This document shows positions 1 through 46,421 of a stretch of 64,000 bases of DNA, in pieces; the stretch's first letter is position 1; each line of letters begins with the position of its first letter. The notes under the pieces were generated by a model that saw only the letters and a list, made by a program, of their open reading frames with translations, did not search any database and had not been told where the DNA came from. The DNA lies in the IMG/VR virus record IMGVR_UViG_3300050120_000361, positions 62,001 through 126,000 of that record; one strand, 5' to 3'. The translations under genes and the position numbers were made by a program.

Positions 1-2712
1 GGGTATCATCAGCTTGTAGCCCTCCCGCAGGAGCTCCACCGCCTTCGCGGCAAGCCTCGTAACTGAGTCCAATGTGTCCCCGCACACCATGAACTCCATA
101 AGCTTCTCGTGGCTTGGCTTGGTCATGCGTATCACGTTTGCAACCTGACTGAAGAAGCTCAGCTCCCCGGTCTCAGTGCCGGTGAGCATTACCAGTTTTG
201 CGGCGAAAGGGTCGTTGGACGATATGAAGAACAGTTCCTTCATCTTCTTAATCACATTGGACGTTGCCTCTATGCGGTATGCGGAAGTGAACAGCAGGTG
301 GCTCTCGTCTATCAGTATGTAGTCGAACATCCTGCTCAGCTTCTCGTAGTTCGACCTGCTGAACTTGTCGAAAGTGGTCACAGCGTTCCTGCCGTACTGT
401 ATGTCCTTTATGTCCTGTGAGCCGTAGAAGGTGTCAAACATCTCCGTTATCGAGGCGTCATTGACCACCTTGTTCTTTATCACGCTTATGTACGGAAGCA
501 CCAGCAGTATGCGCTTCCCGTCGCGCGCCATCTGCTTTATCCATTCGGTCTTACCGCTGCCGGGTGGGGACAGGACTATGTTCACCCTGTCGCCGACAAC
601 GAGCTTGTAAAGCTGCTCCTTGTAGTCTGAAATGTACTCGTGCTCGGACATTATGAACATCGGCACCAGCACGTCGTTCTTCAGGCTCTTCATTATCTTT
701 TCGGAGAAGTTCCGCCTGAAGTCGTTGTCCACCTTTTCGGCGACCTCGGGCTCTATGGACTTTATGATGCCTGACCGCTTGAGTATTTCAAGGCCGTATT
801 TGGTGGGCTCCTTGCGGTTCGACATGGCGCAGGAGTAGAACGAGTTTATTTCGCCCTTGTTCTTGAGCTGCTCGGAGTTCAGTATAATGTGCGCTATGGG
901 CAGTCCGTTCTTACCGAAAAGGGCCGCGAGCGTGTTGCATACGTTGTACCTTATGTTGTAGTCTATCTTTCCGGTAATGTGGACTATCGCGGAAAGGTCC
1001 CCTCCGAGCGCGACGAATTTGGACAGGTCGACCTTCTCCTCGCGCTTCCTCAAATGCTCCACGGGCTCCTCGACCACGAGCTCCTCGTTCAGGCGGGTGG
1101 TCAGCCGCGTGGTTCGCATCAGCACCCTGTCAATTGTCTTTTGGCTTTCATACCCGTCAGGCGTCTGGCCGAGCGCGAGCGAGCAGTGCAGGTCCATGAA
1201 GTTATGGTTTATCAGCGGCATTGGGTCGTAGGCGAGGCGTATGCCCGCGGTTATCCTCGCAACTACGTTGTCCATGTACCTGTTCTCAAACACCTGCTTT
1301 CCGTCGCCGTCCCTGTAGTCGAAGGAAATCCCATTACCGTTTATGTTGTGCAGGCGCCACAGGGCCTCGTGTATGTTGCTCGACTTGACGTGGTAGTTCA
1401 CCTGGTGCCAGTACTGTGAAACGTACTCGTTGTCGCTGTCCATGGTGTAGACGTGGTGCGGCGGGGTGGACTTGGTGTATATGTGCAGTCCGTTCCCAGA
1501 TGCGGACTTGCATATCCAAAGGTACCAGTGGAACTCGCACATCATGGCGTGAAGGGCTGTCTTCAGGAGTTCAAGGTCACCACCCATCTTCTTCCAGTCC
1601 TTCAAGTCCAAATCGAAAACCTGCATGCCGTTCCACTTGTGGTAGTCAGTCATAGCAGGCCTGAAGCCGTCATATGTCATGTATATCTGCTGCCTTTCGG
1701 CCTTCGACTGTTCCGACACGTCCACGTTAGTTATCTCGAGAAGCAGTTCCCCAAGCGTCCGCGTGCGGTACACGTGCTCCGCAGTCATGTTGTTGACGTA
1801 CATTGTCTCGTGGCAGGTGACGCTGTTGTTGGTTATGAAGGCCTTTGAGAAGAGCACTCCGAGCATCCTGTTAGAGATTATCTGCTGGTACACGAGCCCC
1901 TGCAGCGCCGAAAGCGCGCCTGTGACCGGAAGGAACTCATTGACTATGTTCTTGGCTGTGTCCCCGGAAGCTACCTTATTGAACATTATGGCCGAGAGCC
2001 TGTGGGCGAGGTCTATATTGGTTTCCAGGTTGTACTTCTCGAAAAGCTCTATGTCATCGGTCTCGGTGCTCTCGGCGTACATTTCGCGCATGGTCATTAT
2101 CAATCCGAGACTGTCGTAGTCAGAGCCGAGGTGCGATGACGGGTCGAGAGCGGTCTTCACCGCGTTCTCAAGCCTTCCCTGCTCAATCAGCTTCAGCTTG
2201 CGGAACAGAACATTGTTCGATACGGATAGTGCTATCAGTTCATCAACCTTCAGGAAGTTGCGCGTGCGCTGCAGGCCTACCTTTTCGACCTCGGCGGCGT
2301 ACCATGGCATTTCGTTAAGGCCGTCTATTGTCTTGCGTATCTCAAGGTAGTTGTCGCGCTGGGCCCTGACAAGTTCGCGCTGCGCCGCACGGAACTTGGC
2401 GGTCTCCTCGTCGTTCCACAGCTTAAGGCGCATGGACTCCATAACCTCCTTATCTATCACGACGCCTGAGTCCAATTCCTGCACAGACTCTATGAAGTCC
2501 GAATGCTCGTCGAATTCGACGTCATCCTGCTCGGGTTCGCCCTCGGGCATTGCGCGCTTCTGGTCCCGTAGCTTCTTAACCTCCCTGCGCAGCCTTTTCT
2601 TGTTGTAGGCGACGACCCTTTCCTCGACGATGCGGTCTATTGACTTCTCGTTGTTTTCCAGGTCTATTGCTGTTATAATATCTGATGAGTATGACGACCT
2701 TAGTTCGGACAT
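1..2712 (-). CDS. Primase-helicase fusion: AEP/VirE-N(BT4734)-like primase-polymerase + PriCT-like domain + SF2 DExH helicase; C-terminus runs off the window
   Basis: Absent from the ORF track because it has no stop in the window. Read manually from ATG at 2712 (MSELRSSYSS...), open to position 1. Motifs: QVFDLDLK and CKSASGNGLHIY (AEP motifs I/II, ~1480-1625), DYNIRYNVCNTLAALFG (PriCT-like), Walker A LSPPGSGKT (~547-575), LLVLPYISV, TTFDKF, ILIDESH (~297-320), MLTGT. Confidence 0.8.
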   Translation of the reverse strand, partial: MSELRSSYSSDIITAIDLENNEKSIDRIVEERVVAYNKKRLRREVKKLRDQKRAMPEGEPEQDDVEFDEHSDFIESVQELDSGVVIDKEVMESMRLKLWNDEETAKFRAAQRELVRAQRDNYLEIRKTIDGLNEMPWYAAEVEKVGLQRTRNFLKVDELIALSVSNNVLFRKLKLIEQGRLENAVKTALDPSSHLGSDYDSLGLIMTMREMYAESTETDDIELFEKYNLETNIDLAHRLSAIMFNKVASGDTAKNIVNEFLPVTGALSALQGLVYQQIISNRMLGVLFSKAFITNNSVTCHETMYVNNMTAEHVYRTRTLGELLLEITNVDVSEQSKAERQQIYMTYDGFRPAMTDYHKWNGMQVFDLDLKDWKKMGGDLELLKTALHAMMCEFHWYLWICKSASGNGLHIYTKSTPPHHVYTMDSDNEYVSQYWHQVNYHVKSSNIHEALWRLHNINGNGISFDYRDGDGKQVFENRYMDNVVARITAGIRLAYDPMPLINHNFMDLHCSLALGQTPDGYESQKTIDRVLMRTTRLTTRLNEELVVEEPVEHLRKREEKVDLSKFVALGGDLSAIVHITGKIDYNIRYNVCNTLAALFGKNGLPIAHIILNSEQLKNKGEINSFYSCAMSNRKEPTKYGLEILKRSGIIKSIEPEVAEKVDNDFRRNFSEKIMKSLKNDVLVPMFIMSEHEYISDYKEQLYKLVVGDRVNIVLSPPGSGKTEWIKQMARDGKRILLVLPYISVIKNKVVNDASITEMFDTFYGSQDIKDIQYGRNAVTTFDKFSRSNYEKLSRMFDYILIDESHLLFTSAYRIEATSNVIKKMKELFFISSNDPFAAKLVMLTGTETGELSFFSQVANVIRMTKPSHEKLMEFMVCGDTLDSVTRLAAKAVELLREGYKLMIP

Positions 2713-2733
2713 TTATGGATTTGTTATGGAATG

Positions 2734-2758
2734 GAAAAGCCCCCGGTTGGAGGCTTTC
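2734..2758 (-). terminator. Probable intrinsic terminator
   Basis: Minus strand GAAAGCCTCC-AACC-GGGGGCTTTTC hairpin, intergenic. Confidence 0.6.
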
Positions 2759-2778
2759 GTTATTTGGTGATTGTGTCT

Positions 2779-3039
2779 TCAGTTTGAAATCAACTCGCAG
2801 TCACCCTTGTCAAGGAATAGGCTGCCGTTCAGCTGCCAGTGATTGGTGAACATGGGGTTGGTTGAGTCGGTAACGACAAGGGTCTGACCGGTCTTGTCCC
2901 CGCTCGCGTCATAGTACCACCTGGCGTTTCTGCCCGTATTGGGCTTGACCCTAATCGTGTGCTGCGGGGCGGGCTTTCCGAAAGAGCCGGTAACTCCGAA
3001 TATTTTTACGTTCTTAGCCTTTCTGTCCTTCTTGCTCAT
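2779..3039 (-). CDS. Hypothetical protein
   Basis: 86-aa ORF packed in the minus-strand gene array. Confidence 0.7.
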   Translation of the reverse strand: MSKKDRKAKNVKIFGVTGSFGKPAPQHTIRVKPNTGRNARWYYDASGDKTGQTLVVTDSTNPMFTNHWQLNGSLFLDKGDCELISN

Positions 3040-3045
3040 TACAGT

Positions 3046-4377
3046 TTATGGGTTTACTATGGTGCCTCTGGTTATTATACCCTTAGTGGTCGAGTCCGTC
3101 ACGGTGTACGCGGTGCCGTTTTCCGGCTGGGTTATCGTTCCCAAATCGAAGTAGTACTTATTGTCTTCGGTCTGCTGGCCGACAATGTACTGCAGCGGCG
3201 ATATGTCGGAAGCCGCAACGTTCATTATCGATGGTGTCTTCACGTTCGGAAACGATACCTTCTTGTTCTCATAGGTTATATCCTGAGACTGCATCTCCAC
3301 ATAGACAGGCTGAAGTATCGGCACTATCTTAACCGACTGGTTGGTGTCGATTACCGTGTTGTTCACTGTAGTCTGCTTGGTCACCGTCACTGGGTATACG
3401 GTTATCTCCTGATTGCTTATGACCGCGTTCAGGAAAGGGGCGACATTGTCCTGCAGGTCGAATATCCTGTTCTGCTGCCTGCTGAGCATTACATTGTTGG
3501 CAGTCACCTCCATTACAACTAGTATAGTGACCAGCCCGCTCCCAAGCCATGGCGTAAAGTCCAGGCCCACCTTAACGGGTTCGAAGTTATTGTCCTCATT
3601 CGAGAGTCGCAGCGTAGAGTAGCCGACTGCATCGTTGCCGTACCTCAAGGTGTACTCTATGCCCACAGGAACTACATTGTTTGTGAAGCCGAAGTAGTCC
3701 AGTATAGACTGCTGCAGGGTCTTGTTGGTCTCAAGCGTCTGGGGGGTGACGACAACGTACTGGTTGTTGTCGAATGATATTGCCGCTGTTATGTAGTCTG
3801 GGAGCGGCGCGGACGAGTTCAGGGGCTCGAAAGCCGAAACGTCATTAGGGTAGTTGGTTACCAGGCCTATGTCAGGCCCATCGGCCAGTATGTCGTCGTA
3901 GGTAACGTATATGGCGGACGCCATCAGGGACTCATTTCCCATGTTCGGCAGGTTGAACGGCACCGAGTAAACGAACATGGCGCCGTCAACCAATTGCACG
4001 TCAGTGTCCTCGGTTATAGCCATATCGCTAATCTGCCACAGCCTCGAGATGAGCACGTTACCGGTTTCCATTCCCTTAACAACCAGCATTATGCCGAATA
4101 CGTTATTCCATGAGAAGCCCTGTCTTACGAGCAAACTTCCAGACATTATGCGTTGGTTGTCGGTCGCGAGGTCCCCGACCGGTATAAGCTCCGTGGACGT
4201 GGCCACCTTGTTCAGTTTGGCCTGGTAAGGCCCCGCATTCCACACGACCTTGTCTATAGTGCCGGCTTCAAGCCATTGCGGACCCTGCGCGTATTTCAAA
4301 AAATCGATACGCGCGCTGTCCGTGGTGTTTATAGACAACAGGACGTCATCCGTAATTCTGTACTGTAGTGCTCCCAT
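3046..4377 (-). CDS. Hypothetical protein, probably virion structural
   Basis: 443 aa, acidic, N/T/V/I-rich beta-type composition like the baseplate genes in this window. Confidence 0.6.
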   Translation of the reverse strand: MGALQYRITDDVLLSINTTDSARIDFLKYAQGPQWLEAGTIDKVVWNAGPYQAKLNKVATSTELIPVGDLATDNQRIMSGSLLVRQGFSWNNVFGIMLVVKGMETGNVLISRLWQISDMAITEDTDVQLVDGAMFVYSVPFNLPNMGNESLMASAIYVTYDDILADGPDIGLVTNYPNDVSAFEPLNSSAPLPDYITAAISFDNNQYVVVTPQTLETNKTLQQSILDYFGFTNNVVPVGIEYTLRYGNDAVGYSTLRLSNEDNNFEPVKVGLDFTPWLGSGLVTILVVMEVTANNVMLSRQQNRIFDLQDNVAPFLNAVISNQEITVYPVTVTKQTTVNNTVIDTNQSVKIVPILQPVYVEMQSQDITYENKKVSFPNVKTPSIMNVAASDISPLQYIVGQQTEDNKYYFDLGTITQPENGTAYTVTDSTTKGIITRGTIVNP

Positions 4378-4573: not shown

Positions 4574-6043
4574 CTATATCTCTATCACGCCTTTCGGGAG
4601 TGCCTTCTTGGGCGTTACAAACCCAATGCCCGGAACGATACCCATGTATTTGCGCCTAAGGTCCACCAAATCCTTTTTGTACATGTCCTCTATTGAAGTG
4701 GCCTTGATGTATGCGAGCTCCTGCTTCAGTGCGATTACCTTTTCGTTTGCCTTCTCAATCTCCTCAGGCGTCAGTCTGTATATCTCCAACTGCATGCCTG
4801 CTTCGGTAACCCCGAACCTCTTGCAGTCCTCAGCTATTGCCGCCTTCGGACGCTTCACCACTATAATCTTTCCGTCAACCACCAGCTGTATGAACTTGGC
4901 CTTGTCCTCAAGGTCGATTATCTGCTGGTCTATTATCGTTATCATACGGACCTTGCGCTGACGGTATATTTCGAGCCTGCGCTTGACGAACCCGTCTATG
5001 AGGTCCTGCGCGGTGTCGAAGTACACGATGCTTTTGCAGTCCTTGTCGATAATGTTCAGCGTGAGCTTGGGTATCTTCTGGTAAAGCTTGAACATTCCGT
5101 AGAACCGCCACTTGTCCTTGTATGCCTTTTGAAGTCCGCCCTTGGGGAACACCGCCACGTATAGTATTGGCTGGGTCTTCGTCTTGCGGTTGTACCAGTC
5201 GGAAATGACACCCTTCTCCTTCAGCTCATTCAATAGTATGGTGTACTTGGCGAAGGACACCCCGTACGGGAGGTCGGTTATTGAGAGCGTGTCCTCGTGG
5301 AACGAGTAGGTACCGACGTTGTACCACGAAGCCTTCGCCTCGTTCCACACCAGGTTCTCGTCCTTTATGCCGAGTATGCGCGGCTTGAGCGGCACGTCCC
5401 ACAGACCCGAGCACGTCCCGTTAACGACTGAGCATATGGTCGCGTCCAGCACGTCCTCGAAGCGGTAGGAGAACGAGCGGAACGAGAAGCCGAAGCCCGG
5501 AGAGTTCGTACGCCACAGAAGCACTATGGGCACGAGGGGCATGAAGTACTTAGGCTCGGTCCACTTGCCGTCCTCGAATATGCGCTCGAGCAGTTCGGTA
5601 TCGGTCTTGAACAGGTCAATGTACTGGGTGGCAGCCACTTCAAGGTACCTCGCGGCAGTCGTGGCGTCAGGAACTCTAAGGCTGCCCTTCTGGCCGATTA
5701 TCTTGAGCGGCGCGGTCTCGAACAAGTGCCCTGAGCCGAACTGCTCTATGGTGTTCTTGAGCGAACTGTCGCCGTGGTGGAACTCGTACTTCATGGTGTC
5801 ACCAATCATGTCAACCATCTTTATCTTCTTGTACTTCCTGAGGTCACCGTTCAGGGCGGCCCACATTATCTTGCGGCCCCCAATGCGTAGTCCGTCCATT
5901 ATGTTCGGAAGCGCCCTGCTTATCACCACGTAGTGAGCGTAGTTCTTGACCTCCGTGTTCAGGAAATCGTCTATGTAACGCTCTGAAAGCTCGGGCCTTT
6001 CCGTAAGTACCGGCGTTTTGTTGGTTATCAATGTCTTAGCCAT
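4574..6043 (-). CDS. DNA topoisomerase II medium (GyrA/ParC-like, T4 gp52-like) subunit
   Basis: RALPNIMDGLR, YEFHHGDSSL, catalytic AARY, EPKYFMPLVP, ITDLPYG. Confidence 0.93.
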   Translation of the reverse strand: MAKTLITNKTPVLTERPELSERYIDDFLNTEVKNYAHYVVISRALPNIMDGLRIGGRKIMWAALNGDLRKYKKIKMVDMIGDTMKYEFHHGDSSLKNTIEQFGSGHLFETAPLKIIGQKGSLRVPDATTAARYLEVAATQYIDLFKTDTELLERIFEDGKWTEPKYFMPLVPIVLLWRTNSPGFGFSFRSFSYRFEDVLDATICSVVNGTCSGLWDVPLKPRILGIKDENLVWNEAKASWYNVGTYSFHEDTLSITDLPYGVSFAKYTILLNELKEKGVISDWYNRKTKTQPILYVAVFPKGGLQKAYKDKWRFYGMFKLYQKIPKLTLNIIDKDCKSIVYFDTAQDLIDGFVKRRLEIYRQRKVRMITIIDQQIIDLEDKAKFIQLVVDGKIIVVKRPKAAIAEDCKRFGVTEAGMQLEIYRLTPEEIEKANEKVIALKQELAYIKATSIEDMYKKDLVDLRRKYMGIVPGIGFVTPKKALPKGVIEI

Positions 6044-8990: not shown

Positions 8991-9505
8991 CAGTCATTCC
9001 CTCCCTGAACCGTTAGGAACTGTCTGAGGTCCGCCTTTGAGTAGTTTATTGACTTGAGCGTTTTGTCGTCGCTTGCCCTGTAGACCAGGTACATGTTTGT
9101 TTTCGGGTCCTTTTTGTAGTAGGCCTCGCAGCGCTCTGGGTGGGCTTCGGAGCCGTAGTGGCCTATGGTTGCCTCGGCGGTTTCCACGTCCTGGCAGGCC
9201 TTTGACATGTTGGAGCGGTGCACCTCGGCGAATGCGCTCGAGAAAAGCTCCTGCATGCCGCACTCGAGAATGGTGCCGGACAGCACGTACTGCAGGTCGC
9301 AGAGCGCGTCGAGCACCCCAGCCTCGTCGCCGCCCCTCATTGCCGTGTCCAATTCCTTCAGCTCCTCGCCTATGAGCTTGACGCGCAGCGCGGCCCTCTT
9401 CTCGTTAGGTATTCCGGGCCTGTCGGCAACAGGGTGCTTGAATGTCTCGTGGAATTGGCCTACCATTGTCAATCCGCTCGGTTCTGTGTAAGATTTTACG
9501 TCCAT
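8990..9505 (-). CDS. MazG-like (PRA-PH/DR2231-type) nucleoside triphosphate pyrophosphohydrolase
   Basis: VGQFHETF, LRVKLIGEELKEL, DALCDLQYV, FAEVHRSNMSK, DDKTLKS. Confidence 0.88.
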   Translation of the reverse strand: MDVKSYTEPSGLTMVGQFHETFKHPVADRPGIPNEKRAALRVKLIGEELKELDTAMRGGDEAGVLDALCDLQYVLSGTILECGMQELFSSAFAEVHRSNMSKACQDVETAEATIGHYGSEAHPERCEAYYKKDPKTNMYLVYRASDDKTLKSINYSKADLRQFLTVQGGND

Positions 9506-9538
9506 TTTTGTGTTATCGTTTCTTATTCGTTATATTTC

Positions 9539-10042
9539 TTATATCTGCGCCGGGTACCATTCGCCCTTGAGCATTACCTCCAGACGCGCCTCTGAAGGCT
9601 TGTTCCAAATGGTGACGTATCCGTTGTTCATTTCGTACCGTCTCTCCCTGCCGTTCAGTTCTGAGGTCACTATGTCCAATACTTCGAAGTAGGTTCCGCG
9701 CTCGTAGTTGAAAGCCCTGAACTTAAGGTCTACGGGCTGTTGCGGCCCCACTTCCCTGTATTCGAGGTTGAATATTATTGCCGGCACGTATTTGGCGTTG
9801 TTCGCGGAAACGACGTAGTAGCCGCCCGCGCTGTAGTTCTTCATTTTGAACTCGTTTTCTGACACATTCACTGTGCCGAAGTTCTTATCCTCGAACTCTA
9901 TGGCTATAACGGGCCGGTTTTCGTCGCGGCGCACGTTCGCTATCTTTAGCGCCCATACCCTGTTAAGGGACAAATAGCTGGGCATTTCAAGCCCGTTTGC
10001 GAACCAGGGCTTTGTGTATTTCGATGAGTCTCCCATAATCAT
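9539..10042 (-). CDS. Conserved phage-type hypothetical protein
   Basis: RVWALKI...GGYYVV...YVPAIIF...Y resembles a widespread small phage domain. Confidence 0.55.
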   Translation of the reverse strand: MIMGDSSKYTKPWFANGLEMPSYLSLNRVWALKIANVRRDENRPVIAIEFEDKNFGTVNVSENEFKMKNYSAGGYYVVSANNAKYVPAIIFNLEYREVGPQQPVDLKFRAFNYERGTYFEVLDIVTSELNGRERRYEMNNGYVTIWNKPSEARLEVMLKGEWYPAQI

Positions 10043-10584
10043 TCGGTTTCAATTGTTTCATAACCAAGGTTCTCTCCACGGAGTATCGCCCATCGTTTGT
10101 CCTCACGCAGGTACGGCCTCTCCACCACCCAGCAATCCATGAATTGTTCCATCAAATGGTCCGCATCCCGTAGTATAACCATTTCCTTGCGGCGCGGGTC
10201 GAGATAGTGCAGCACGTTACCAAGTTTGAGAATTCCCACCGCATGAAACATGGACGGTATCAGGCGCACGGTTAGGTGATATGGTACTATAGGGGTTTCG
10301 ACGAACAGTTCTCCTGGCGCCTCTTCCATCATCACCACGTTCCATATGTGCTCTTTTGGCAATGGTGGGTATGCAGGATTGGATTGAGTTACAAGTCCCA
10401 TTTTCAGTTCGGGAACGCTCATCAATAGCATAGCTTCCACGCGGGTCTCGTCACAGGCCTTGTAATTTGGGTCTTCGCACAGCCTCAACAGATTTTTATC
10501 CTTGAGAATGTTGGCCAACAAGTACACGGTGCACCAGCCTATGGAAGGCTGAACGTATGGTACTTCAAGTTTCAGATGCCTCAC
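10039..10584 (-). CDS. Putative papain-fold cysteine peptidase (C39-like/Josephin-like)
   Basis: LEVPYVQPSIGWC (Gln, then Cys at a helix start), FHAVGI (His), YLDP (Asp). Confidence 0.55.
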   Translation of the reverse strand: MRHLKLEVPYVQPSIGWCTVYLLANILKDKNLLRLCEDPNYKACDETRVEAMLLMSVPELKMGLVTQSNPAYPPLPKEHIWNVVMMEEAPGELFVETPIVPYHLTVRLIPSMFHAVGILKLGNVLHYLDPRRKEMVILRDADHLMEQFMDCWVVERPYLREDKRWAILRGENLGYETIETE

Positions 10585-12527
10585 GCGGCGTCCTCCATTC
10601 CCTCAGTACCACCGTCTCCAATATCCATGAGCAATTCCTTGCGGAGAGCCGTAGACTTGTCGAACCATGTCCTAACCGTGTTGAGGTAGTCCTTGTTCTT
10701 GAGCTTGAACTGTATCAGGCGCTGGTTGTGGAGCATCTCCTCATAGTGCCTGTCCTCAAGGGAGCCGAGACCCTTCTTGTAAGCGATGTCCCACCCCTTG
10801 ATGTTCGGAACGTCCCTGTCGTACTCCTCGAGGGTGTAGTAGTACCTCTCCTGCCCGCCGCTTTCAGGGTCGCCCTTGGAGGCTATGATTATTGGCGACA
10901 CAAGCCTGTAGATGCGCTTGGCAAGGAACAGCTCTGGAAAGTGCATGGCGAAGAAGGTTATCAGAAGCCCGCAGATGTGCGAGCCGTCATGGTCCATATC
11001 CGTGCCGAACACAATCTTTCCGAAGGCGCAGTTCTTTATGTTGTTTTGGGCGTCATTGAACTGCAGGTTCAGTATGGCTATTATCTCTCTGAGCTCCTGG
11101 TTCTCGACAATTTCAGTCTTTGACAGGTTAAGCGTGTTCTTCACCTTGCCCCTAAGCTCATAGGACGCCATATTCCATGGGTTTGCGAACATTGCGAACC
11201 CGTTGGCCGCGGAAGTCCCCTCGAACAGGAACAGCTCGTTCTGCTCCTTGTTGGTGCGGTTAGAGCAGTTGGTGAACTTGCGGCTCTTGGTCTTCTTTAT
11301 CTCTGCGTTAAGCTTCTTCAGAAGCTTCTTCTGCTCGGCGGCGTACTTCAATTGGTAGTACTCCACCATGTTCTCCACTATCTTGCCCTCCTCCAAACGG
11401 TCGAGAAATGACTTGGGCAGCGAAAGGCAGTCGTGAGGTATGGGCGTTACGAGTATGGTCTTTGTCTGGGCGTCGTAGTCTGGGTTGGTAACTGAGGTGG
11501 ACACGAACACGGACACCGCGTCGCGTATGTCGCGTTCGGTTATCAGCTCCATGTCCTTCTTCCTGAACACCTCGAGGAACTTGTCGGTTACCTTCTTCAT
11601 CACCTTCTTGATGTGCGTCCCCTGGGAGCACACGGCGCCGTTTATGAAGCCGTAGTCGTATCCGATGTTCGGGAGTATCACCACATGGTCCCTGAGAGTG
11701 TCGTGGCTCACGCACTGCCCGCGCTGCTCCTCGGTCAGGTGGAGGCTGACGAACTCCTGAAAGTGAGCGAACTTGAATGTCTGGTTCAGCGCCCCTTCGC
11801 CCGCGTCCGTCTCGAACGAGATTTCAAGTCCCGGATTGGCGGCGCACGCGTCGATGCAGCGCTTCTGCATTATCCTTATGGACGCAGTGTCGAGCTCCGC
11901 TATGGCGAAGCGCGAAAGCTCAATCCTGAAGTCCACCTGGGTGTAGTGTCCCTTGTGGGGCTCTACGGTCTCGGACACGAGGTCCTTCATGTTGTTCGCC
12001 CACTCGGTGCGTATCCTGTTCGCGCCGTCGGCAGTCTCTACTGAGAACTTGGTGGAGTATATGTTCGTTAGCTTCGCGCCGAGCCCGTTCAGACCCGCGC
12101 CTTCGCGCTCCTCGGTGTAGTTGCTCGAGGTCTTCAGAAGCCCGAATATCATGGTGGAGACGTACATCTTGAGCACGCCGTGCACCACCACCGGAATGCC
12201 GCCGTCGTCCCTGACGGAAACGGTGCCGTCGCGCATCACCCTGACGGCTATCCTGTTTATGTCGAAGAGCCTGCTCTTCCTGCGGCGCTCGTCTATCGGA
12301 TTGGTCAGTATCTCATCGAAAAGCTTCAGAAGGCCGGCGTTGTAGCCCACCTTGTCCAGCCGCACAATCATGTTGTCAGATGGCTTGTACAGGTTGTACG
12401 GGCCAACAACGGAGTATATGTTGCCTATGTAAACCGCCGGCCTTAGAAGCACATGGTCTATCTCAGACATCAGCGTGTACTTTTCCTCAATGCTCAATTT
12501 ATTATCAATACTGTTATTTTCTGACAT
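10581..12527 (-). CDS. DNA topoisomerase II large (GyrB/ParE-like, T4 gp39+gp60 fused) subunit
   Basis: HVLLRPAVYIG, KLFDEILTN, DDGGIPV, GLNGLGAKLTNIYS, TOPRIM FEGTSA, LRGKVKN, TDMDHDGSHI, YKKGLGS. Confidence 0.95.
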   Translation of the reverse strand: MSENNSIDNKLSIEEKYTLMSEIDHVLLRPAVYIGNIYSVVGPYNLYKPSDNMIVRLDKVGYNAGLLKLFDEILTNPIDERRRKSRLFDINRIAVRVMRDGTVSVRDDGGIPVVVHGVLKMYVSTMIFGLLKTSSNYTEEREGAGLNGLGAKLTNIYSTKFSVETADGANRIRTEWANNMKDLVSETVEPHKGHYTQVDFRIELSRFAIAELDTASIRIMQKRCIDACAANPGLEISFETDAGEGALNQTFKFAHFQEFVSLHLTEEQRGQCVSHDTLRDHVVILPNIGYDYGFINGAVCSQGTHIKKVMKKVTDKFLEVFRKKDMELITERDIRDAVSVFVSTSVTNPDYDAQTKTILVTPIPHDCLSLPKSFLDRLEEGKIVENMVEYYQLKYAAEQKKLLKKLNAEIKKTKSRKFTNCSNRTNKEQNELFLFEGTSAANGFAMFANPWNMASYELRGKVKNTLNLSKTEIVENQELREIIAILNLQFNDAQNNIKNCAFGKIVFGTDMDHDGSHICGLLITFFAMHFPELFLAKRIYRLVSPIIIASKGDPESGGQERYYYTLEEYDRDVPNIKGWDIAYKKGLGSLEDRHYEEMLHNQRLIQFKLKNKDYLNTVRTWFDKSTALRKELLMDIGDGGTEGMEDAA

Positions 12528-12686
12528 ATCAGTCCGTTATTTCTACCTTGTAATTAATTAGTGCTTGATAAACTTTATCGGAAATTCTATCCCTATATAG
12601 CCTATTCCATACTGACTGCGCTTGAGCCTTATGTTCATTAATTCTTGATTTTATGCTGTAATTATTATATCCCAACAGTAGGCCCT
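12528..12686. promoter_or_regulatory. AT-rich intergenic region upstream of the topoisomerase gene, with palindromes
   Basis: TAATTAATTA (12551-12560), GATAAA-C-TTTATC inverted repeat (12567-12579), and CCGATAAA on the minus strand (12574-12581). Confidence 0.45.
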
Positions 12687-13133
12687 TTAAACGGGCGTTT
12701 CCACGGGCCCTTGGCCTTTCCAGCCTATGGACACCAGGTACTTTATAAGCTCTTTCTCGAGCGATACTATTTCCCTGTTGCGGAGCTGGTGCTCCCAGAC
12801 CCTAAGCACCCTGTAGCCTTTTTTGTTTAGCGCTTTTATGTGTTCTGAGTCACGTTCAACATTTCTTGCCAGTTTTGGCAACCAAAATTCAGTATTGCTC
12901 TTGGGCTACTTGTAGCACTTAGGGCATTTATGCCAGTAGCAGCCGTGCATGAATATCGCCAGGTTTAGTTCCCAAACCACCGCGTCGGGCTTTCCGGGAA
13001 GGTGTCTGGAGTGCTTCTGGTATGTCACGCCCATCCCGTCCAGTATTGCGAAGAGTCGCAGTTCGGGTTTGGTGTTTGTGGAGCCTATTTTCGACATTAT
13101 GTCGCTTCTCTTCTCCTTGGTGAACTTGTCCAT
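12687..13133 (-). pseudogene. vsr: Very-short-patch repair endonuclease Vsr, interrupted by one in-frame TAG at 12906-12908
   Basis: MDKFTKEKRSDIMSKIGSTNTKPE, LPGKPD, IFMHGCYWHKC...CYK*PKSNTEFWLPKLARNVERD...GYRVLRVWEH; both halves are in the same frame. Confidence 0.88.
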
Positions 13134-13154
13134 TCTTTTCTGGGCCAATGGTAA

Positions 13155-13186
13155 GGCCCCCTGCTCTGTTTCCAGTGCAGGGGGCC
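13155..13186 (-). terminator. Strong hairpin (terminator or RNA processing site)
   Basis: GGCCCCCTGC / GCAGGGGGCC 10-bp stem plus 3 further bp, GAAA loop on the minus strand; weak U tract. Confidence 0.55.
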
Positions 13187-13216
13187 GTTATAGGGCGTCA
13201 AAGCGCTTTTGGCTTG

Positions 13217-14332
13217 TCAGATGCCAAGGGATGACTTTATCCTGTCGTTTGTGGTGCCCTTCGGGTAGTCGTGCTGTTCGGTGTCCGGATTGGACAGGGC
13301 CGCGACAAGGCGTTCCTTCTTGTCGGATGTCATGTAGGGCGGCTCGGGCTGCTTGCTGGTTACGGCCCCACGGGCTCCGGTGCCTGAGCCGAGGAAACTC
13401 GTCTCGTATACGGTAGAGCCGTATGAGCCGCTGTAGCCGCTGTCCCCGTGAGCGGTTACGACCCCGGCGGCCGGGAGAACCTTTATCGCTCCGGTCTTCA
13501 GGTTCTTGAGCTTGAGGGCGTAGAGCGGCCACTCGCTCTCGAATGAGCGGTACTTGATCCAGCTTATCTGGTTCAGCTGGCCGCCAACCGACACCATGTC
13601 CCGGTCGGTCTCGAGAGGCTCGCGCTTGAACGAGCCGGTGTAGCCCATGCCGGCCTTGCGCCTCACGGACGTGGCCATTCCGGGCTTTCCGCTCTTTGGC
13701 ATTGTTGAAGGCTTAACGGAGTGAGCATTATCATACCCGTGCCCGAAGGATATTCCAGACCACACCTGACCGTCAAGCGCTGCCTTCATTTTTGCCCTTA
13801 CCGCTCCAGATGCCGTTGACGGAAGCCCCTGAAGGTCCTTCAATTCCTGCTCGGTGTAGCCGGTGAATATAGCCGCGAACTGCGGGTCGGAACGGAAGTC
13901 GCCCCAAACCGATGATATTAGGTCGTCCCAAGCGTCCTGTTCGACAATTATGTCCTTGTAGTCCTGGTAAGACTCGTACTTCGGGTGCTCGTCGGCGTGC
14001 ATCATTCCGCTCTCCATGACCTCGGTGTCGTTGCCGTTAGCTCCCCACACGCCGTAGTTCCCTATTATCACCCCGTTAACACCGCGCAGGAAGTCGTCGT
14101 AGTTCTCCCACAGGGTTGTGAGCTTCAGCGGTGTTCCAGCCCCCTCGTCAAGCCTGTCCATGTCGTTCAGTCTGGGACCCTCGAGTATGTCCATACTTGC
14201 CGGGAGGCCGTATGACTCGTTCACGTTGGCGCCGCACGCGTCGCAGAGCCCGCACTTCTGCTCGGCTGCGTTCGAGAGCGGTGTGTGGCACACGGAGCAC
14301 GCTCCGAATTGGTCGTTTGCTACTATCTTCAT
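13217..14332 (-). CDS. Hypothetical protein with N-terminal Zn finger, possibly an internal head protein
   Basis: CSVC...CGLCDAC; acidic N-terminal half with VNES, ILE, LWE and IVE motifs reminiscent of prohead-protease sites. Confidence 0.55.
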   Translation of the reverse strand: MKIVANDQFGACSVCHTPLSNAAEQKCGLCDACGANVNESYGLPASMDILEGPRLNDMDRLDEGAGTPLKLTTLWENYDDFLRGVNGVIIGNYGVWGANGNDTEVMESGMMHADEHPKYESYQDYKDIIVEQDAWDDLISSVWGDFRSDPQFAAIFTGYTEQELKDLQGLPSTASGAVRAKMKAALDGQVWSGISFGHGYDNAHSVKPSTMPKSGKPGMATSVRRKAGMGYTGSFKREPLETDRDMVSVGGQLNQISWIKYRSFESEWPLYALKLKNLKTGAIKVLPAAGVVTAHGDSGYSGSYGSTVYETSFLGSGTGARGAVTSKQPEPPYMTSDKKERLVAALSNPDTEQHDYPKGTTNDRIKSSLGI

Positions 14333-14638: not shown

Positions 14639-16603
14639 TTATAGTATGTATCCGTTTTTGTTCTTTCGCCCCCTGCCGCCGCTTGAGTTCCACATCTGCT
14701 CGTGGTTCCGAAGGTGAAAGCCAGTGGGTATCCTGTACACGTTCGCCTGGGCAACCCTTAATTTCTCCTGCTCGTCAAGAAGCTCCTGTGCTATGTCGTT
14801 GCACCGCTGACGCATGTTAGTTTCGGCGTCCGCGAGGAACTCCCTGCTGTACATGTTGCCCGACTTGACGAAATGGGCTATGGTGACGTCCACCATCACG
14901 GTATCGTCATGCCCGTACTGCGCGGCGTAGGTGTCGTTGGCGTTCTTTCCGAAGTTGAGGTACTCCTCAACCGACATGTAGTGCGTTTCGTCGAATGTCT
15001 CGTTTACTATCAGCGAAGAGAAGGACTTGACGCCGACCTTCTTGTTGTACTGGTCCCAGCGTATTCCGCGCTCGTAGTCCTCCTTGCTTGCCCGCATGAA
15101 CTTGGCGAATACGATGTTGTCGAACCACGAGTACGCCTTGTCGAACCTTACCAGGTGGTCTATGTGCGCGAAGAACTCCCCGCCGTAGTTGTTCGTCTCC
15201 ACCACGACGCGAACCTGCGAAGGGTTGAAGTACTTGAGCAGGTCGAGCGTTTTCTGAGCGAAGTCCTCAACTGAAATCTCCTTGTCCCTGAACACGCCAA
15301 TGTTCTTGAACTCTATGCGCTTTTTGGTCCTGTTCCACTCCATCTTCCGTATCTTCAGTACAGAGCTGTCCTGCCCGAGGCCTTCGGCGATGTCTATTCC
15401 CATTATGAAGTAATCCTCCATGAAGTCGTATTCGGTCCCGACCTCAACGCTCTTTCCGTCCTCGGTCTCCGCCATGAAGTGGTTGGCCTTGAACTGTATG
15501 TCGAACAGTTCCCCGAGGTAGTGGTTGTCCTTGGACCAGGCGTTCTTGTTGAGCGTCTGCTCCTGCCTCAGGGATTTCTGTATCTTGACGTTGAAAATGC
15601 TCTTCAGCTGCGTGTCGAATGAGCACTCAAAGCCCATCTCCCACGCCTCGAGGCCCACGTTGGCTATTGTGTCCTGCTTGAACGACTCGTCCCTGCCAGG
15701 AACCTCGTGCCAGTAAATCCTGCTCGATATGAACCTGTTCGTCTTCTCCTGCGAGCCGAGCCAAAGGTCGTAGAACTTGTTCCTGCCGTTCGGGGTGGAG
15801 GCTATTATGCACCTGGACTTGGGATTATTGACAAGGGCCGGGTAGATGTTGTTCCAGAACTTATCCACCTTGGACGCGGGTATGTACGCGAACTCGTCAA
15901 TGAACAGGAAGTCGAGAGAGAAGCCCTGAACCACTGACTCCGACGCGATGCCTATCGATAGCCTGCACCCGTTGTCGAGCGTGAAGCCCCTGGCGTTGAA
16001 TGATATGAAGCCGGGCTGCATGAAGAACGGGAGCCCGTTGAACGCCTCCTTGATCTTCTTGAGTATCTCGTTAACGACCATTTCGGACTGGGCCACTACG
16101 ACGCAGTCCTTATCGAAGTTGAAGCAGCAGAAGTGCACTATCTCAACCACAGTGGTTGTGGTCTTTCCCGACTGGCGGGGAAACATCAGAATGTTCCAGT
16201 TATGCGCCGCGTACTTCGCGAGCAAATCCTCCTGGTACCGGCGAAGGGCAATCTTCTGCCAGCCGTCATTACCGTCCTTGAGCTGCACGAAGTTGTTGCC
16301 GAAAAGCACCTTATCCCCCATGCACATCTCAAGCACCGCCATCTCATCCTCAGTGTACTTGAAGGGCAGGTTTCCCTTGCGGAGGTTGGCGTCCCTCACG
16401 GTCTTAAGGAACGGGGACTCCTTCAGCTTGTAGCCGTCAAGTATGCCAGACTTGGCAAGCTCAACAGACTCGCTGTTCCATACGGACCTGCTCGCCTCGT
16501 CGTTTACGATGATACGAGGGTCAAACACACCGTGGGTTCCCCCAAGCCGCTTGTTCAGCAGGTCATTGGTCCTATTTATGCGTTCCGCGGTCTCGGTGGC
16601 CAT
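14639..16603 (-). CDS. terL: Terminase large subunit (T4 gp17-like)
   Basis: LRRYQ, PRQSGKTTT (Walker A), FLFIDEFAYI (Walker B), STPNGRNKFY, nuclease GIDIAEGLGQDSS, VETNNYG, HDDTVM. Confidence 0.95.
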   Translation of the reverse strand: MATETAERINRTNDLLNKRLGGTHGVFDPRIIVNDEASRSVWNSESVELAKSGILDGYKLKESPFLKTVRDANLRKGNLPFKYTEDEMAVLEMCMGDKVLFGNNFVQLKDGNDGWQKIALRRYQEDLLAKYAAHNWNILMFPRQSGKTTTTVVEIVHFCCFNFDKDCVVVAQSEMVVNEILKKIKEAFNGLPFFMQPGFISFNARGFTLDNGCRLSIGIASESVVQGFSLDFLFIDEFAYIPASKVDKFWNNIYPALVNNPKSRCIIASTPNGRNKFYDLWLGSQEKTNRFISSRIYWHEVPGRDESFKQDTIANVGLEAWEMGFECSFDTQLKSIFNVKIQKSLRQEQTLNKNAWSKDNHYLGELFDIQFKANHFMAETEDGKSVEVGTEYDFMEDYFIMGIDIAEGLGQDSSVLKIRKMEWNRTKKRIEFKNIGVFRDKEISVEDFAQKTLDLLKYFNPSQVRVVVETNNYGGEFFAHIDHLVRFDKAYSWFDNIVFAKFMRASKEDYERGIRWDQYNKKVGVKSFSSLIVNETFDETHYMSVEEYLNFGKNANDTYAAQYGHDDTVMVDVTIAHFVKSGNMYSREFLADAETNMRQRCNDIAQELLDEQEKLRVAQANVYRIPTGFHLRNHEQMWNSSGGRGRKNKNGYIL

Positions 16604-24649: not shown

Positions 24650-25591
24650 TTATCTGAATATCGAGCGCAGTGCCGAAATGCACGCGAAGAATGTGCCGAA
24701 CTTGTTTATGGTGGTCACGTACCTGAACGAGTAGTCGCAGACTATCGCGGCAGCCTTCATGGTGTGCTCGTACTTGCCCTGGCTGTTAAGCCATGTGAAG
24801 TACGGCTCTCCAAGGGATATTAGACACTCGCGCTCCTTGCCCTTGTAGGCGCTCACGGCCTCGTAGAACTTCTGCGCCTCGGCGTTGGACTGTATCAGCT
24901 CGTAGAGCTCCACGTTGGCCGTTCCGTTTTCGGACAGTATAACCACATTGTCCTCGGTAACGTCCCGCTTGCTGTCTATGAATTGCTGCAGTATCACGAG
25001 CAAGTGCCTGAAGTCCGGAAAGTTCATCTGGTATATGAGCTTCAGGCCGCGGTTGTCATACCTGATGTTGTTCTCGTTGCATATGCGTACGGCGTACGAT
25101 ATGTACTTCTTCTGCTGCTCGGTTATCTCCTGGCCCTGGTAAGAGTACTCAACGTTCACGCAGCGCGACTTTATGGCGGAGTTGACGGTTTCTGGCTCGT
25201 TGGTGTTGAACACGAAGTTCACGCTCTTGGCGGTGTCCAGCACGACCTTGAAACCGTCCTGTATCTTGTTGGCAACGTTCTCGCACTCGTCAACGATGAG
25301 GGACTTCTGCCTGCCGAGCACTGAGTGCCCTGACACGAATGGGTACACCTTCTGGCGCATCACCTCCACGTTGAAGTCGTTCGAACCGGACAGGTACAGA
25401 ACGTCGTGCCCGAGCGTAAGGAGCTTGGCCGTGGATGTCTTGCCGGTTCCGGGAGGCCCGTGCTGGAAAAGCCGCCACCCCCTCGCGTCCGTTGTTGTGT
25501 TGGTCAGGAGGGTCTCTATCCTGTTTGGCAGGTAGAGGTCTTTGAGGGATTTCGGGGAATATATCTCAAGCAGTGTCTTCTTTTCGCTCAT
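24650..25591 (-). CDS. Sliding clamp loader AAA+ subunit (T4 gp44/RFC-like)
   Basis: LEIYSPKSL, HGPPGTGKTS, IVDECE, NTN, IKSRC, FPDFRH. Confidence 0.92.
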   Translation of the reverse strand: MSEKKTLLEIYSPKSLKDLYLPNRIETLLTNTTTDARGWRLFQHGPPGTGKTSTAKLLTLGHDVLYLSGSNDFNVEVMRQKVYPFVSGHSVLGRQKSLIVDECENVANKIQDGFKVVLDTAKSVNFVFNTNEPETVNSAIKSRCVNVEYSYQGQEITEQQKKYISYAVRICNENNIRYDNRGLKLIYQMNFPDFRHLLVILQQFIDSKRDVTEDNVVILSENGTANVELYELIQSNAEAQKFYEAVSAYKGKERECLISLGEPYFTWLNSQGKYEHTMKAAAIVCDYSFRYVTTINKFGTFFACISALRSIFR

Positions 25592-45369: not shown

Positions 45370-45442
45370 TACAGATACGATACCCAAAACGGCGGACCAA
45401 TAAAAGGGCGGCCGCCGGTACGAAACTAACGAAAAGCGAAAC

Positions 45443-46408: not shown

Positions 46409-46421
46409 AAATAATAAGGAA

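What the first reader, a model, noticed from the sequence alone, without database searches (positions are those of the whole stretch)
1..2712. AEP primase + SF2 helicase fusion inside an otherwise T4-type replisome
Seen: one ORF of more than 900 aa with AEP-type DLD and SASGNGLH motifs, a PriCT-like helix and a DESH SF2 helicase, preceded by ~300 aa of unknown helical sequence. Known: T4-like phages use a DnaG-type primase (gp61) and an SF4 helicase (gp41), and AEP primases usually pair with SF3 or VirE helicases. Inference: this is an initiator/primosome, with a helicase resembling origin-binding SF2 enzymes, working alongside gp32-, gp44-, RNase H- and UvsW-like proteins in a hybrid replisome.
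Basis: partly seen in the sequence, partly recalled or inferred. Interest (0 to 1): 0.6.

Follow-up and report, generated by a model that had tools for sequence, protein, structure and literature searches.

The report
Phage AEP primase–SF2 helicase fusion
A 208-kb phage encodes one 1413-residue protein that joins an archaeal/eukaryotic-type primase to a superfamily-2 helicase; it is the phage's only recognisable primase and fork-helicase candidate, and it is a relative of Sphingomonas phage PAU gp68, where this fusion was already noted in 2016.

Summary
It lies on the minus strand, starts at window 2712 and runs off the window. In the 208,538-bp DTR phage genome it is 1413 aa long.

The domain order is:
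- a clade-specific N-terminal extension (1-~330)
- an AEP primase (~340-520) with invariant D367/D369, S405/G408/H410 and D481
- a PriCT-like helical domain (~560-690)
- an SF2 helicase (~696-1130: GSGKT, DESH, TGT, QxxxRxR)
- a confidently modelled C-terminal domain (1131-1413) with no known fold

The AEP call rests on profile-profile alignment to AEPs that pass Pfam BT4734-like_N (99.4%). Weak but consistent fold hits to PrimPols agree with it.

No gp41/DnaB or gp61/DnaG homologue was detected. A split T4-like PolB, a gp44-like clamp loader, a FEN/RNase H-like exonuclease and topoisomerase II are present. gp32 was not confirmed.

The protein matches PAU gp68 (30% identity, E 4e-162). Kazlauskas et al. 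2016 already called gp68 an SF2 candidate replicative helicase with an AEP domain. This is therefore a new member of a known but biochemically untested kind. At least 100 clusters at 50% identity match the AEP region, and about 80 carry both domains. Some homologues have an intein inside the helicase Walker A motif.

The parts
1..2712 (-). In-window part (residues 1-904) of a 1413-aa primase-helicase gene. The full gene is genome 60471-64712 (minus strand), equal to L002:10474-14712(-). The last 509 residues lie upstream of window base 1.
1723..2712 (-). N-terminal extension, residues 1-~330. It matches no family and is the least conserved part (mean column identity 34%). It is found only in the closest ~6 of 107 representative clusters and does not align with PAU gp68.
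1153..1695 (-). AEP (archaeo-eukaryotic primase) catalytic domain, residues ~340-520.
   Evidence: hhalign of A1 against remote AEPs gives 99.4% probability, E 6.7e-22. Those remote hits pass the Pfam BT4734-like_N cut-off. Fold hits go to ASFV PrimPol and the LigD polymerase domain. Atlas searches agree.
1600..1617 (-). AEP motif I (FDLDLK; D367 and D369, metal ligands).
   Evidence: Invariant in 26/26 homologues. Aligned to the DxD of remote AEPs.
1483..1506 (-). AEP motif II (SASGNGLH; G408-L409-H410 is the 'sxH' nucleotide-binding motif).
   Evidence: S403, S405, G408 and H410 are invariant. Aligned to StgGkGiH of remote AEPs.
1225..1278 (-). AEP motif III region (YMDNVVARITAGIRLAYD; D481, with R486 and D496).
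   Evidence: D481, N482, R486 and D496 are invariant. Aligned to 'lD' of remote AEPs.
643..1035 (-). PriCT-like helical domain, residues ~560-690 (RYNVCNTLA... and EINSFYSCA.SN.KEP.K.GLEIL blocks).
1..627 (-). SF2 helicase, first RecA-like lobe (residues 696-904 inside the window). Walker A is at window 547-567, DESH at 298-309 and TGT at 172-186. The second lobe (to ~1130) and the C-terminal domain (1131-1413) lie outside the window, at genome 60471-62000.
   Evidence: Pfam ResIII scores 23.5 bits against a cut-off of 22.5, and DEAD also matches. ResIII matches 25/25 homologues, DEAD 19/25 and Helicase_C 18/25. Motif residues are invariant. The CTD model has pLDDT 89 and no fold match.
2737..2756 (-). 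Short G+C hairpin in the 66-nt gap between the upstream 86-aa ORF and the ATG at 2712. There is no Shine-Dalgarno-like sequence before the start.
   Evidence: Read directly from the sequence. The terminator scan did not call it.

Best explanation
The gene encodes the phage's own primase-helicase, the counterpart of Sphingomonas phage PAU gp68.

Shown:
- One polypeptide carries a catalytically intact AEP primase domain and a following PriCT-like helical domain. In other AEPs that domain is the counterpart of the primase large subunit.
- It also carries a complete SF2 helicase core and a conserved, well-folded C-terminal domain of unknown fold.
- No SF4 (gp41/DnaB) helicase or DnaG/gp61-type primase was detected in the genome. 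A T4-like PolB (split into two genes), a gp44-like clamp loader, a FEN/RNase H-like exonuclease, an NAD-dependent ligase and topoisomerase II are present.

Inferred:
- The SF2 motor opens or translocates along phage DNA. The tethered AEP, helped by the PriCT-like domain, makes primers on the exposed single strand.
- The PolB/clamp-loader machinery extends those primers, and the 5'-3' exonuclease and ligase process them.
- Most SF2 helicases of the ResIII/DEAD type move 3'->5'. The motor would then ride the leading-strand template, unlike gp41. This is inference only.
- The C-terminal domain and the clade-specific N-terminal extension are most likely DNA-binding or partner-binding modules. Their roles are not known.
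For: Architecture.

AEP identity:
- The A1 profile search over 1.84 billion proteins finds 107 clusters.
- The distant hits P0213 and P0220 pass the Pfam BT4734-like_N cut-off, and P0199, P0207 and P0214 are hits to the AEP-region profile that carry a VapE ATPase domain.
- hhalign of A1 against these gives 99.4% probability with motifs I-III in register.
- The Atlas neighbours by features and by shape are BT4734-like_N (+PriCT_2) proteins.

No rival primase or helicase detected:
- DnaB_C, Toprim_2 and Toprim_4 find nothing in six frames. DnaB_C does find T4 gp41.
- phmmer --max with T4 gp41, gp61 and dda finds nothing.
- Among the called ORFs with a Walker A-like motif (the screen is not exhaustive, it missed the 506-aa SF2 helicase), the only other helicase is the DinG-like one.
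- PAU and PTm1, which carry the same fusion, also lack DnaB_C.

Importance: about 15% of homologues carry an intein exactly inside the Walker A motif (GSGK|C...HN|T). From general knowledge, that is a site typical of indispensable replication ATPases.

Conservation:
- All four segments are kept in about 120 homologues.
- The helicase co-occurs with the AEP in about 80 of the 107 clusters.
- The gene order topoisomerase II - 443-aa ORF - primase-helicase is kept in a 46%-identical relative on a 218-kb contig.

Literature: PAU gp68 was named an SF2 candidate replicative helicase with an AEP domain, alongside a T4-like clamp and clamp loader (PMC4889955).
Against: - There is no biochemical or genetic evidence for any member of this family.
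- P0002 itself reaches no Pfam AEP model.
- SF2 helicases are rarely replicative (PMC4889955).
- The genome has two other helicases that could serve at forks: a DinG-like one at genome 15954-17906 and an SF2 one at window 31884-33401.
- Use of host DnaB/DnaG cannot be excluded.
- The Toprim Pfam models do not detect T4 gp61 itself. Absence of a gp61-type primase therefore rests on single-sequence phmmer and on there being no Toprim hit other than the GyrB-like topoisomerase.
Confidence: 0.65

Rival explanations
1. It is an origin-specific initiator and not the fork helicase. As with herpesvirus UL9, the SF2 motor together with the C-terminal domain would recognise and open an origin. The AEP would lay the first primer. 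Fork unwinding would then be done by another helicase: the phage's DinG-like or second SF2 helicase, or host DnaB.
For: - SF2 helicases act as monomers or dimers and are rarely fork helicases (PMC4889955).
- A conserved extra C-terminal domain follows the helicase.
- The non-significant Foldseek hits of that domain include winged-helix DNA binders such as Cdc6/ORC, CodY, MarR and LexA.
- Two other helicases are encoded.
Against: - No hit to the herpes origin-binding family appears among the listed Pfam rows (first 25 of 33 families shown), and no UL9 chain appears among the PDB hits.
- No iterons or repeat arrays occur in the AT-rich or strand-switch regions.
- Lagging-strand synthesis would still need a primase at the fork, and this is the only primase found.
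Confidence: 0.2
2. It is an accessory repriming or repair PrimPol-helicase used for damage tolerance, replication restart or recombination-dependent replication. It would be dispensable for bulk replication, which would be primed by host enzymes or by recombination intermediates.
For: - Characterised AEPs related to the BT4734/VirE-N lineage behave as DNA primase-polymerases (PMC11724360).
- T4-like phages rely heavily on recombination-dependent replication (PMC7824862).
- An SbcCD-like fusion protein is encoded.
Against: - The fusion is kept in about 80 of the 107 clusters, in every ~140-220-kb relative looked at.
- Homologues carry inteins in the P-loop.
- The gene sits among core replication genes with conserved synteny.
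- No UvsX homologue was detected.
- No alternative primase was found.
Confidence: 0.1
3. The AEP-like region is a degenerate, non-catalytic module, and the protein is only a helicase, as the database annotations of PAU gp68 and PTm1 ORF-117 say.
For: - Public annotations say only 'helicase'.
- No Pfam AEP model matches this protein.
Against: All three catalytic motifs are invariant across sequences that are otherwise only 44-80% identical in this region, and they align with the motifs of recognised AEPs.
Confidence: 0.04

Closest known systems
Sphingomonas phage PAU gp68 (and Tenacibaculum phage PTm1 ORF-117 / PTm5 / pT24 'helicase')
   Same: The AEP, PriCT-like, SF2 helicase and (in PAU) C-terminal domains come in the same order. 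tblastn gives 30% identity over residues 286-1406, E 4e-162. The reverse phmmer search picks this ORF at E 1.7e-180. PAU is likewise a ~200-kb phage with a split PolB and a T4-like clamp loader and without DnaB (PMC4889955).
   Different: The first ~285 residues do not align with PAU gp68. Identity is only 30%. PTm1 aligns only to residue 1157, so its C-terminal domain differs.
BT4734-like / VirE-N AEP primases (Pfam PF08800), usually fused to VapE/VirE, DnaB-like or DUF927 ATPases
   Same: This is the nearest recognised AEP lineage by profile search, profile-profile alignment, protein-language-model neighbours and predicted shape. As there, an AEP is followed by a PriCT-type helical domain and an NTPase.
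   Different: This protein does not reach the PF08800 cut-off. Motif II keeps the canonical His (H410), whereas Lys is reported as the family's signature (PMC11724360, citing Iyer et al. 2005). The fused motor is an SF2 helicase, not a VapE, SF3 or SF4 ATPase.
T4 gp41-gp61 primosome
   Same: The presumed job is the same: unwinding and priming for a PolB + clamp/clamp-loader replisome.
   Different: The folds are unrelated. Here there is an AEP instead of a Toprim/DnaG primase, and a two-lobe SF2 helicase instead of a hexameric SF4. The two are in one polypeptide instead of two proteins. No gp41, gp61 or dda homologue is present.
Other primase-helicase fusions: poxvirus D5 / ASFV C962R (AEP+SF3), T7 gp4 (DnaG+SF4), N15/PY54 RepA (DnaG+SF2)
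   Same: The primase lies N-terminal to the helicase in one chain. ASFV PrimPol is the best solved structural match to the AEP + helical region. According to PMC4889955, N15/PY54 RepA shows that an SF2 helicase fused to a primase can be replicative.
   Different: The pairing differs: AEP with SF2. Kazlauskas et al. list this pairing for PAU gp68 only. AEPs usually pair with SF3 helicases.
all3500-family AEPs fused to remote SF2 helicases (pVOG1685/9714, UL9-like) described by Kazlauskas et al. 2018
   Same: These are also AEP + SF2-like fusions in mobile elements. The paper says the closest helicase homologues are in some T4-like phages (PMC5862659).
   Different: The AEP lineage is different (PrimPol-PV1 supergroup). 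No test here links the two helicase groups.

Membership tests
AEP (archaeo-eukaryotic primase) superfamily | Motif I hhhDhD/E (metal binding) | tested here: met
   QVFDLD, with D367 and D369 invariant in 26/26 homologues. Aligned to the DiD of remote AEPs.
AEP (archaeo-eukaryotic primase) superfamily | Motif II sxH (nucleotide binding) | tested here: met
   G408-L409-H410 within SASGNGLH. S405, G408 and H410 are invariant.
AEP (archaeo-eukaryotic primase) superfamily | Motif III hD/E | tested here: met
   M480-D481 is invariant and aligns to 'lD' of remote AEPs.
AEP (archaeo-eukaryotic primase) superfamily | Significant profile-level homology to recognised AEPs | tested here: met
   The A1 profile reaches proteins that pass the PF08800 cut-off (P0213 at 24.3 bits and P0220 at 25.7 bits against 22.4) with library-wide E-values of 2e-6 and 3.5e-4; P0220's match lies in the PriCT-like part of the profile, downstream of its AEP domain. 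hhalign gives 99.4% probability, E 6.7e-22.
AEP (archaeo-eukaryotic primase) superfamily | RRM-like catalytic fold | tested here: inconclusive
AEP (archaeo-eukaryotic primase) superfamily | Template-dependent primer synthesis | not testable with these tools
   Needs a biochemical assay.
BT4734-like AEP family (Pfam PF08800) | Score above the Pfam gathering cut-off | tested here: not met
   No Pfam families matched P0002 residues 296-690. Only 4 of 26 homologues matched, with best E 0.0052. The six-frame search of the genome found nothing.
BT4734-like AEP family (Pfam PF08800) | Lys in place of His in motif II (signature reported in PMC11724360, citing Iyer et al. 2005) | tested here: not met
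   H410 is invariant. The literature statement was read.
PriCT-2 domain (PF08707) | Pfam match, or a clear structural match, of the helical domain after the AEP | tested here: inconclusive
SF2 helicases | Walker A, motif II DExH, motif III and motif VI arginines in two RecA-like lobes | tested here: met
   GSGKT at 718-722, DESH at 802-805, TGT at 844-846 and QFNARIRR at 990-997, all invariant. ResIII scores 23.5 bits against a cut-off of 22.5. ResIII matches 25/25 homologues and Helicase_C 18/25.
SF2 helicases | ATP-dependent unwinding and its polarity | not testable with these tools
   Needs a biochemical assay.
Herpesvirus UL9-type origin-binding helicases (PF02399) | Family-level sequence match | tested here: not met
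   It is not among the four families matched by this protein's helicase region. It is also absent from the 25 commonest of the 33 families matched by the 25 homologues at E<=1. The PDB profile search returns the reverse-gyrase helicase domain and XPB, not UL9. Whether that PDB copy holds UL9 was not checked.
T4-type primosome (gp41 SF4 helicase + gp61 DnaG-type primase) | Presence of gp41/DnaB_C and gp61 homologues | tested here: not met
   DnaB_C finds nothing in this genome but does find T4 gp41. phmmer --max with gp41 and gp61 gives best E-values of 1.3 and 0.56. Toprim_2 and Toprim_4 find nothing, but they also miss T4 gp61.
PAU gp68-type AEP-SF2 primase-helicases | Best-hit match in both directions, with the same domain order | tested here: met
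   tblastn of P0002 hits PAU gp68 at E 4e-162 over residues 286-1406. phmmer of PAU gp68 against this genome's ORFs hits this ORF at E 1.7e-180. PAU gp68 (H9NBU5) is the top BFVD structural hit, E 6e-21.

The most novel reading that the evidence does not exclude
The SF2 motor is the true fork helicase of a T4-like PolB/clamp-loader replisome. It would move 3'->5' on the leading-strand template while its covalently tethered AEP + PriCT module primes the displaced strand. That geometry resembles eukaryotic CMG with Pol alpha-primase more than any bacterial or T4 primosome. The C-terminal domain of unknown fold would be the tether to DNA or to the polymerase or clamp loader.
Probability: 0.25. 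Interest if true: 0.7.

Novelty: new member of a known kind. Interest (0 to 1): 0.42.

Why it matters
If this protein is the replicative primase-helicase, a whole clade of ~140-220-kb phages replaces the textbook gp41/gp61 (DnaB/DnaG-type) primosome. The clade includes PAU, the Tenacibaculum and Chryseobacterium jumbo phages and many metagenomic contigs. The replacement is a single chain built from an archaeal/eukaryotic-type primase and a non-hexameric SF2 motor, while T4-like polymerase accessory proteins are kept.

That makes the family a natural test of how freely replisome modules can be swapped. It also bears on whether a two-lobe SF2 helicase can drive a fork. The family is large, uncharacterised and annotated in databases only as 'helicase'. 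The domain map, catalytic residues and P-loop intein sites given here make it directly testable. PAU gp68 offers an isolate-based system.

The idea itself is not new. It was put forward for PAU gp68 in 2016.

Tried and rejected
- Direct sequence searches of the whole protein and of the AEP profile against PDB sequences found nothing.
- Pfam and PHROGs on the whole protein recognise only the helicase N-lobe.
- Six-frame searches with PF08800 and PF09250 found nothing in this genome, and PF08800 found nothing in PAU or PTm1.
- C-terminal domain: PDB profile search, Atlas feature search, Foldseek and VIA-wide gave no convincing relative despite a confident model. A winged-helix reading was considered, but only non-significant Foldseek rows support it, so I do not adopt it.
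- Origin hypothesis: the repeat search of window 44100-46500, 12400-13300 and 2600-3100 gave only short chance-level repeats.
- gp32: PF08804 found nothing.
- Sliding clamp: PAU gp109, the clamp proposed by Kazlauskas et al., has no BLASTP similarity to either ORF lying between the two PolB halves here.
- Toprim_2 and Toprim_4 turned out to be poor controls because they miss T4 gp61.
- PAU gp67, the upstream neighbour of gp68, is not homologous to the upstream 443-aa ORF here.
Its 'helical' character is therefore unverified.
- The search for homologous proteins sees only candidates of 0.55-1.75 times the query length. Shorter and longer relatives came from the exhaustive profile search.
Full report
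**What is there**

The finding's coordinates hold one long ORF on the minus strand. Its ATG is at window 2712 and it stays open to window base 1, giving 904 aa inside the window. The window is bases 62001-126000 of a 208,538-bp virus record with direct terminal repeats, rated complete. In the genome the ORF continues to 60471 and encodes 1413 aa (P0002). The plus-strand ORFs listed over the same bases are shadows of this gene.

**Motifs and conservation**

- FDLDLK at residues 366-371
- SASGNGLH at 403-410
- PPGSGKT at 716-722
- DESH at 802-805
- TGT at 844-846
- QFNARIRRMG at 990-999, which lies outside the window

A word-based search with residues 300-690 found 176 proteins, nearly all ~1370-1790 aa and from metagenomic contigs of up to 218 kb. 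BLAST of four segments shows that all of them are kept in about 120 of these proteins: the N-terminal, AEP, helicase and C-terminal segments. The helicase is the most conserved (60-85% identity) and the N-terminus the least (27-60%). Alignments of 25-26 diverse members show these invariant residues:
- AEP region: D367, D369, S403, S405, G408, H410, D481, N482, R486 and D496
- Helicase region: G720, K721, D802, E803, H805, G845, T846, Q990, R994 and R996

**Is residue ~340-520 an AEP?**

Direct tests were blank. Pfam and PHROGs see only the helicase N-lobe. PDB sequence searches found nothing. Six-frame scans with BT4734-like_N and Prim-Pol found nothing. Indirect evidence converges:

1. Four of 26 homologues give sub-threshold Pfam hits to BT4734-like_N, an AEP family.
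2. The protein-language-model neighbours of residues 330-690 are clusters carrying BT4734-like_N plus PriCT_2. The nearest predicted shapes in the ESM Atlas are BT4734-like_N proteins fused to DnaB-like, VapE or DUF927 ATPases.
3. An AF2 model of residues 296-690 (pLDDT 70) has AEPs as its best PDB matches.
   - Foldseek returns ASFV PrimPol, the LigD polymerase domain, human PrimPol, NrS-1 and Prim-PolC at E 8e-3 to 0.5.
   - These scores are weak and count only as consistent.
4. The decisive evidence is at the sequence-profile level.
   - An exhaustive profile search of 1.84 billion representatives with alignment A1 found 107 clusters at E<=1e-3.
   - Among the distant ones, P0213 and P0220 pass the Pfam cut-off for BT4734-like_N.
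   - P0199, P0207 and P0214 carry a VapE ATPase domain after the region that matches the AEP profile. P0152 and P0176 combine a sub-threshold BT4734-like_N match with DEAD/ResIII.
   - hhalign of A1 against an alignment of these distant proteins gives 99.4% probability and E 6.7e-22 over 141 columns, with motifs I, II and III in register.
   - The distant set was chosen from A1's own hits, so hhalign is not independent of the search. The Pfam assignments of those proteins are independent.

I conclude that this is a catalytically intact AEP. Its nearest recognised lineage is the BT4734/VirE-N family. It is not a member in the strict sense, for three reasons. It misses the Pfam cut-off. It keeps His in motif II, where Lys is reported as that family's signature (PMC11724360). 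Its motor is an SF2 helicase and not VapE.

**The PriCT-like domain**

Residues ~560-690 are highly conserved and predicted helical. Three things support a PriCT reading:
- the PriCT_2 content of the Atlas neighbours;
- the A1 profile matching the region just downstream of the AEP domain in P0220;

No Pfam model matches, so the call is tentative.

**The helicase**

ResIII passes its Pfam cut-off on this protein. Across 25 homologues, ResIII matches 25, DEAD 19 and Helicase_C 18. A profile search of PDB sequences returns the reverse-gyrase helicase domain (E 6e-6) and XPB. About 15% of homologues are ~350 aa longer and carry Hom_end/LAGLIDADG domains. Alignment shows an intein inserted exactly inside the Walker A motif: GSGK|C...HN|T. 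From general knowledge, inteins settle in the most conserved sites of indispensable replication proteins. This is indirect support for an essential ATPase.

**The flanking domains**

The N-terminal ~330 residues match nothing. They are confined to about 6 clusters and do not align with PAU gp68. They were not folded.

**Genome context**

Present:
- Topoisomerase II subunits: window 4577-6043 and 10584-12527.
- A T4-type large terminase: window 14642-16603.
- A 5'-3' exonuclease/RNase H-like protein: window 19732-21036.
- A gp44-like clamp loader: window 24653-25591, phrog_168 E 8e-38, T4 gp44 E 1e-17.
- A second SF2 helicase: window 31884-33401.
- A DinG-like helicase, an NAD-dependent ligase, an SbcD-SbcC fusion, a dCMP deaminase and DHFR.
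- A T4 gp43-like PolB split into two genes, at genome 173942-175474 and 177486-178757, as in PAU gp105/gp110.

Not detected:
- DnaB_C finds nothing in this genome, while the same search finds T4 gp41.
- Toprim_2 and Toprim_4 find nothing.
- T4 gp41, gp61, dda and uvsX find nothing by phmmer --max.
- gp32 (PF08804) finds nothing.

Among the called ORFs with a Walker A-like motif, the only other helicase is the DinG-like one. That screen is not exhaustive, since it missed the 506-aa SF2 helicase. One caveat applies to the primase: the Toprim models also miss T4 gp61, so absence of a divergent DnaG-type primase is not proven. PAU and PTm1 likewise lack DnaB_C. PTm1's only weak hit lies inside its own AEP-SF2 gene.

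**Relatives and literature**

Among isolates, the best matches are PAU gp68 (30% identity over residues 286-1406, E 4e-162), the PTm1/PTm5/pT24 'helicases' and Chryseobacterium phages MA9V-1 and MA9V-2. All are annotated as helicase or hypothetical protein. PAU gp68 is also the top hit in BFVD.

Kazlauskas, Krupovic and Venclovas (2016, PMC4889955) wrote that PAU gp68 is a likely SF2 replicative helicase that has an AEP primase domain. They also reported that PAU has a T4-like clamp and clamp loader, and that AEPs usually co-occur with SF3 helicases. The jumbo-phage survey of Iyer et al. 2021 (PMC7824862) assigns DnaG-like primases to group 2 phages in general. In the passages I retrieved it does not discuss this fusion.

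The present gene is therefore a new, divergent member of a kind that is already described computationally and has never been tested. What this analysis adds:
- the size of the family: at least 107 clusters at 50% identity match the AEP region, and about 80 of them also carry the SF2 helicase;
- the affinity of the AEP to the BT4734/VirE-N lineage, with a canonical His in motif II;
- the P-loop inteins;
- the confidently folded C-terminal domain with no known fold;
- the clade-specific N-terminal extension;
- conserved synteny with topoisomerase II and a 443-aa unknown ORF.

**Mechanism and confidence**

- The domain architecture is close to certain.
- That the AEP primes phage DNA synthesis is likely (about 0.7). 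The catalytic residues are intact, it is the only primase found, and it is fused to a motor.
- That the SF2 motor is the fork helicase is about even. The alternative is an origin-opening or restart engine.
- Polarity, primer chemistry (RNA or DNA) and the roles of the N- and C-terminal domains are inference or unknown.

**Limits**

No alternative genetic code was needed.

Noticed in passing
genome 173942-175474 and 177486-178757 (outside the window; L009:5942-7471 and 9486-10754): The T4 gp43-like family B DNA polymerase is split into an exonuclease half (phrog_2062) and a polymerase half (phrog_1918), with two unknown ORFs (287 and 325 aa) between them. PAU has the same split (gp105/gp110, with gp106-109 between). 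PAU's proposed clamp gp109 shows no BLASTP similarity to either intervening ORF here.
   Followed up: partly
genome 28620-30698, minus strand (L006:9623-11698): A 692-aa protein contains a strong match to ribosome modulation factor (PF04957, E 8e-23, residues 425-458). This is an unusual domain to find inside a large phage protein.
   Followed up: no
homologues P0012, P0015, P0017, P0047, P0071, P0073, P0126 (corresponding to window 547-567): About 15% of homologues carry a ~350-aa intein with homing-endonuclease domains, inserted exactly inside the helicase Walker A motif (GSGK|C...HN|T). The copy in this window is intein-free.
   Followed up: yes
window 3046-4377, minus strand: A 443-aa ORF matches no Pfam or PHROG family. 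It lies one small ORF upstream of the primase-helicase and is syntenic and 33% identical (E 1e-77) in a 218-kb relative contig (L010). There the order GyrB-like ... topoisomerase IIA - small ORF - 448-aa ORF - primase-helicase is conserved. It could be a partner protein, or its position could simply be conserved.
   Followed up: partly
genome 41739-45827, minus strand (L007:3742-7827): A single 1362-aa protein combines an N-terminal Metallophos (SbcD/gp47-like) domain with an SMC_N/AAA_23 (SbcC/gp46-like) domain. The two T4 recombination nuclease subunits are fused in one chain. A relative contig shows the same arrangement (L010, 1260-aa gene).
   Followed up: no
window 2713-2778: The 66-nt gap before the ATG holds a short G+C hairpin (2737-2756) and no Shine-Dalgarno-like sequence. 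The promoter and terminator scans found nothing convincing at the gene start.
   Followed up: partly
window ~44000-46500: Gene orientation and AT skew switch here, from a minus-strand block to a plus-strand structural block. No iterons or repeat arrays were found there or at 12528-12686.
   Followed up: partly
genome 46332-47072 (L007:8335-9072) and genome 13272-14123 (L005:13275-14123): A 246-aa protein gives a weak PurA/Whirly-type ssDNA-binding hit (E 0.007) and might be the missing SSB. A 283-aa protein carries a Walker A motif (GMGKT) and matches no family. Neither gp32 nor UvsX was detected anywhere in the genome.
   Followed up: no
genome 53590-54930 (L002:3593-4930) and window 34853-35734: A BCS1-like AAA ATPase (BCS1_N + AAA + lid) and a non-specific DNA/RNA endonuclease (Endonuclease_NS) are encoded within the early/replication gene block.
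   Followed up: no
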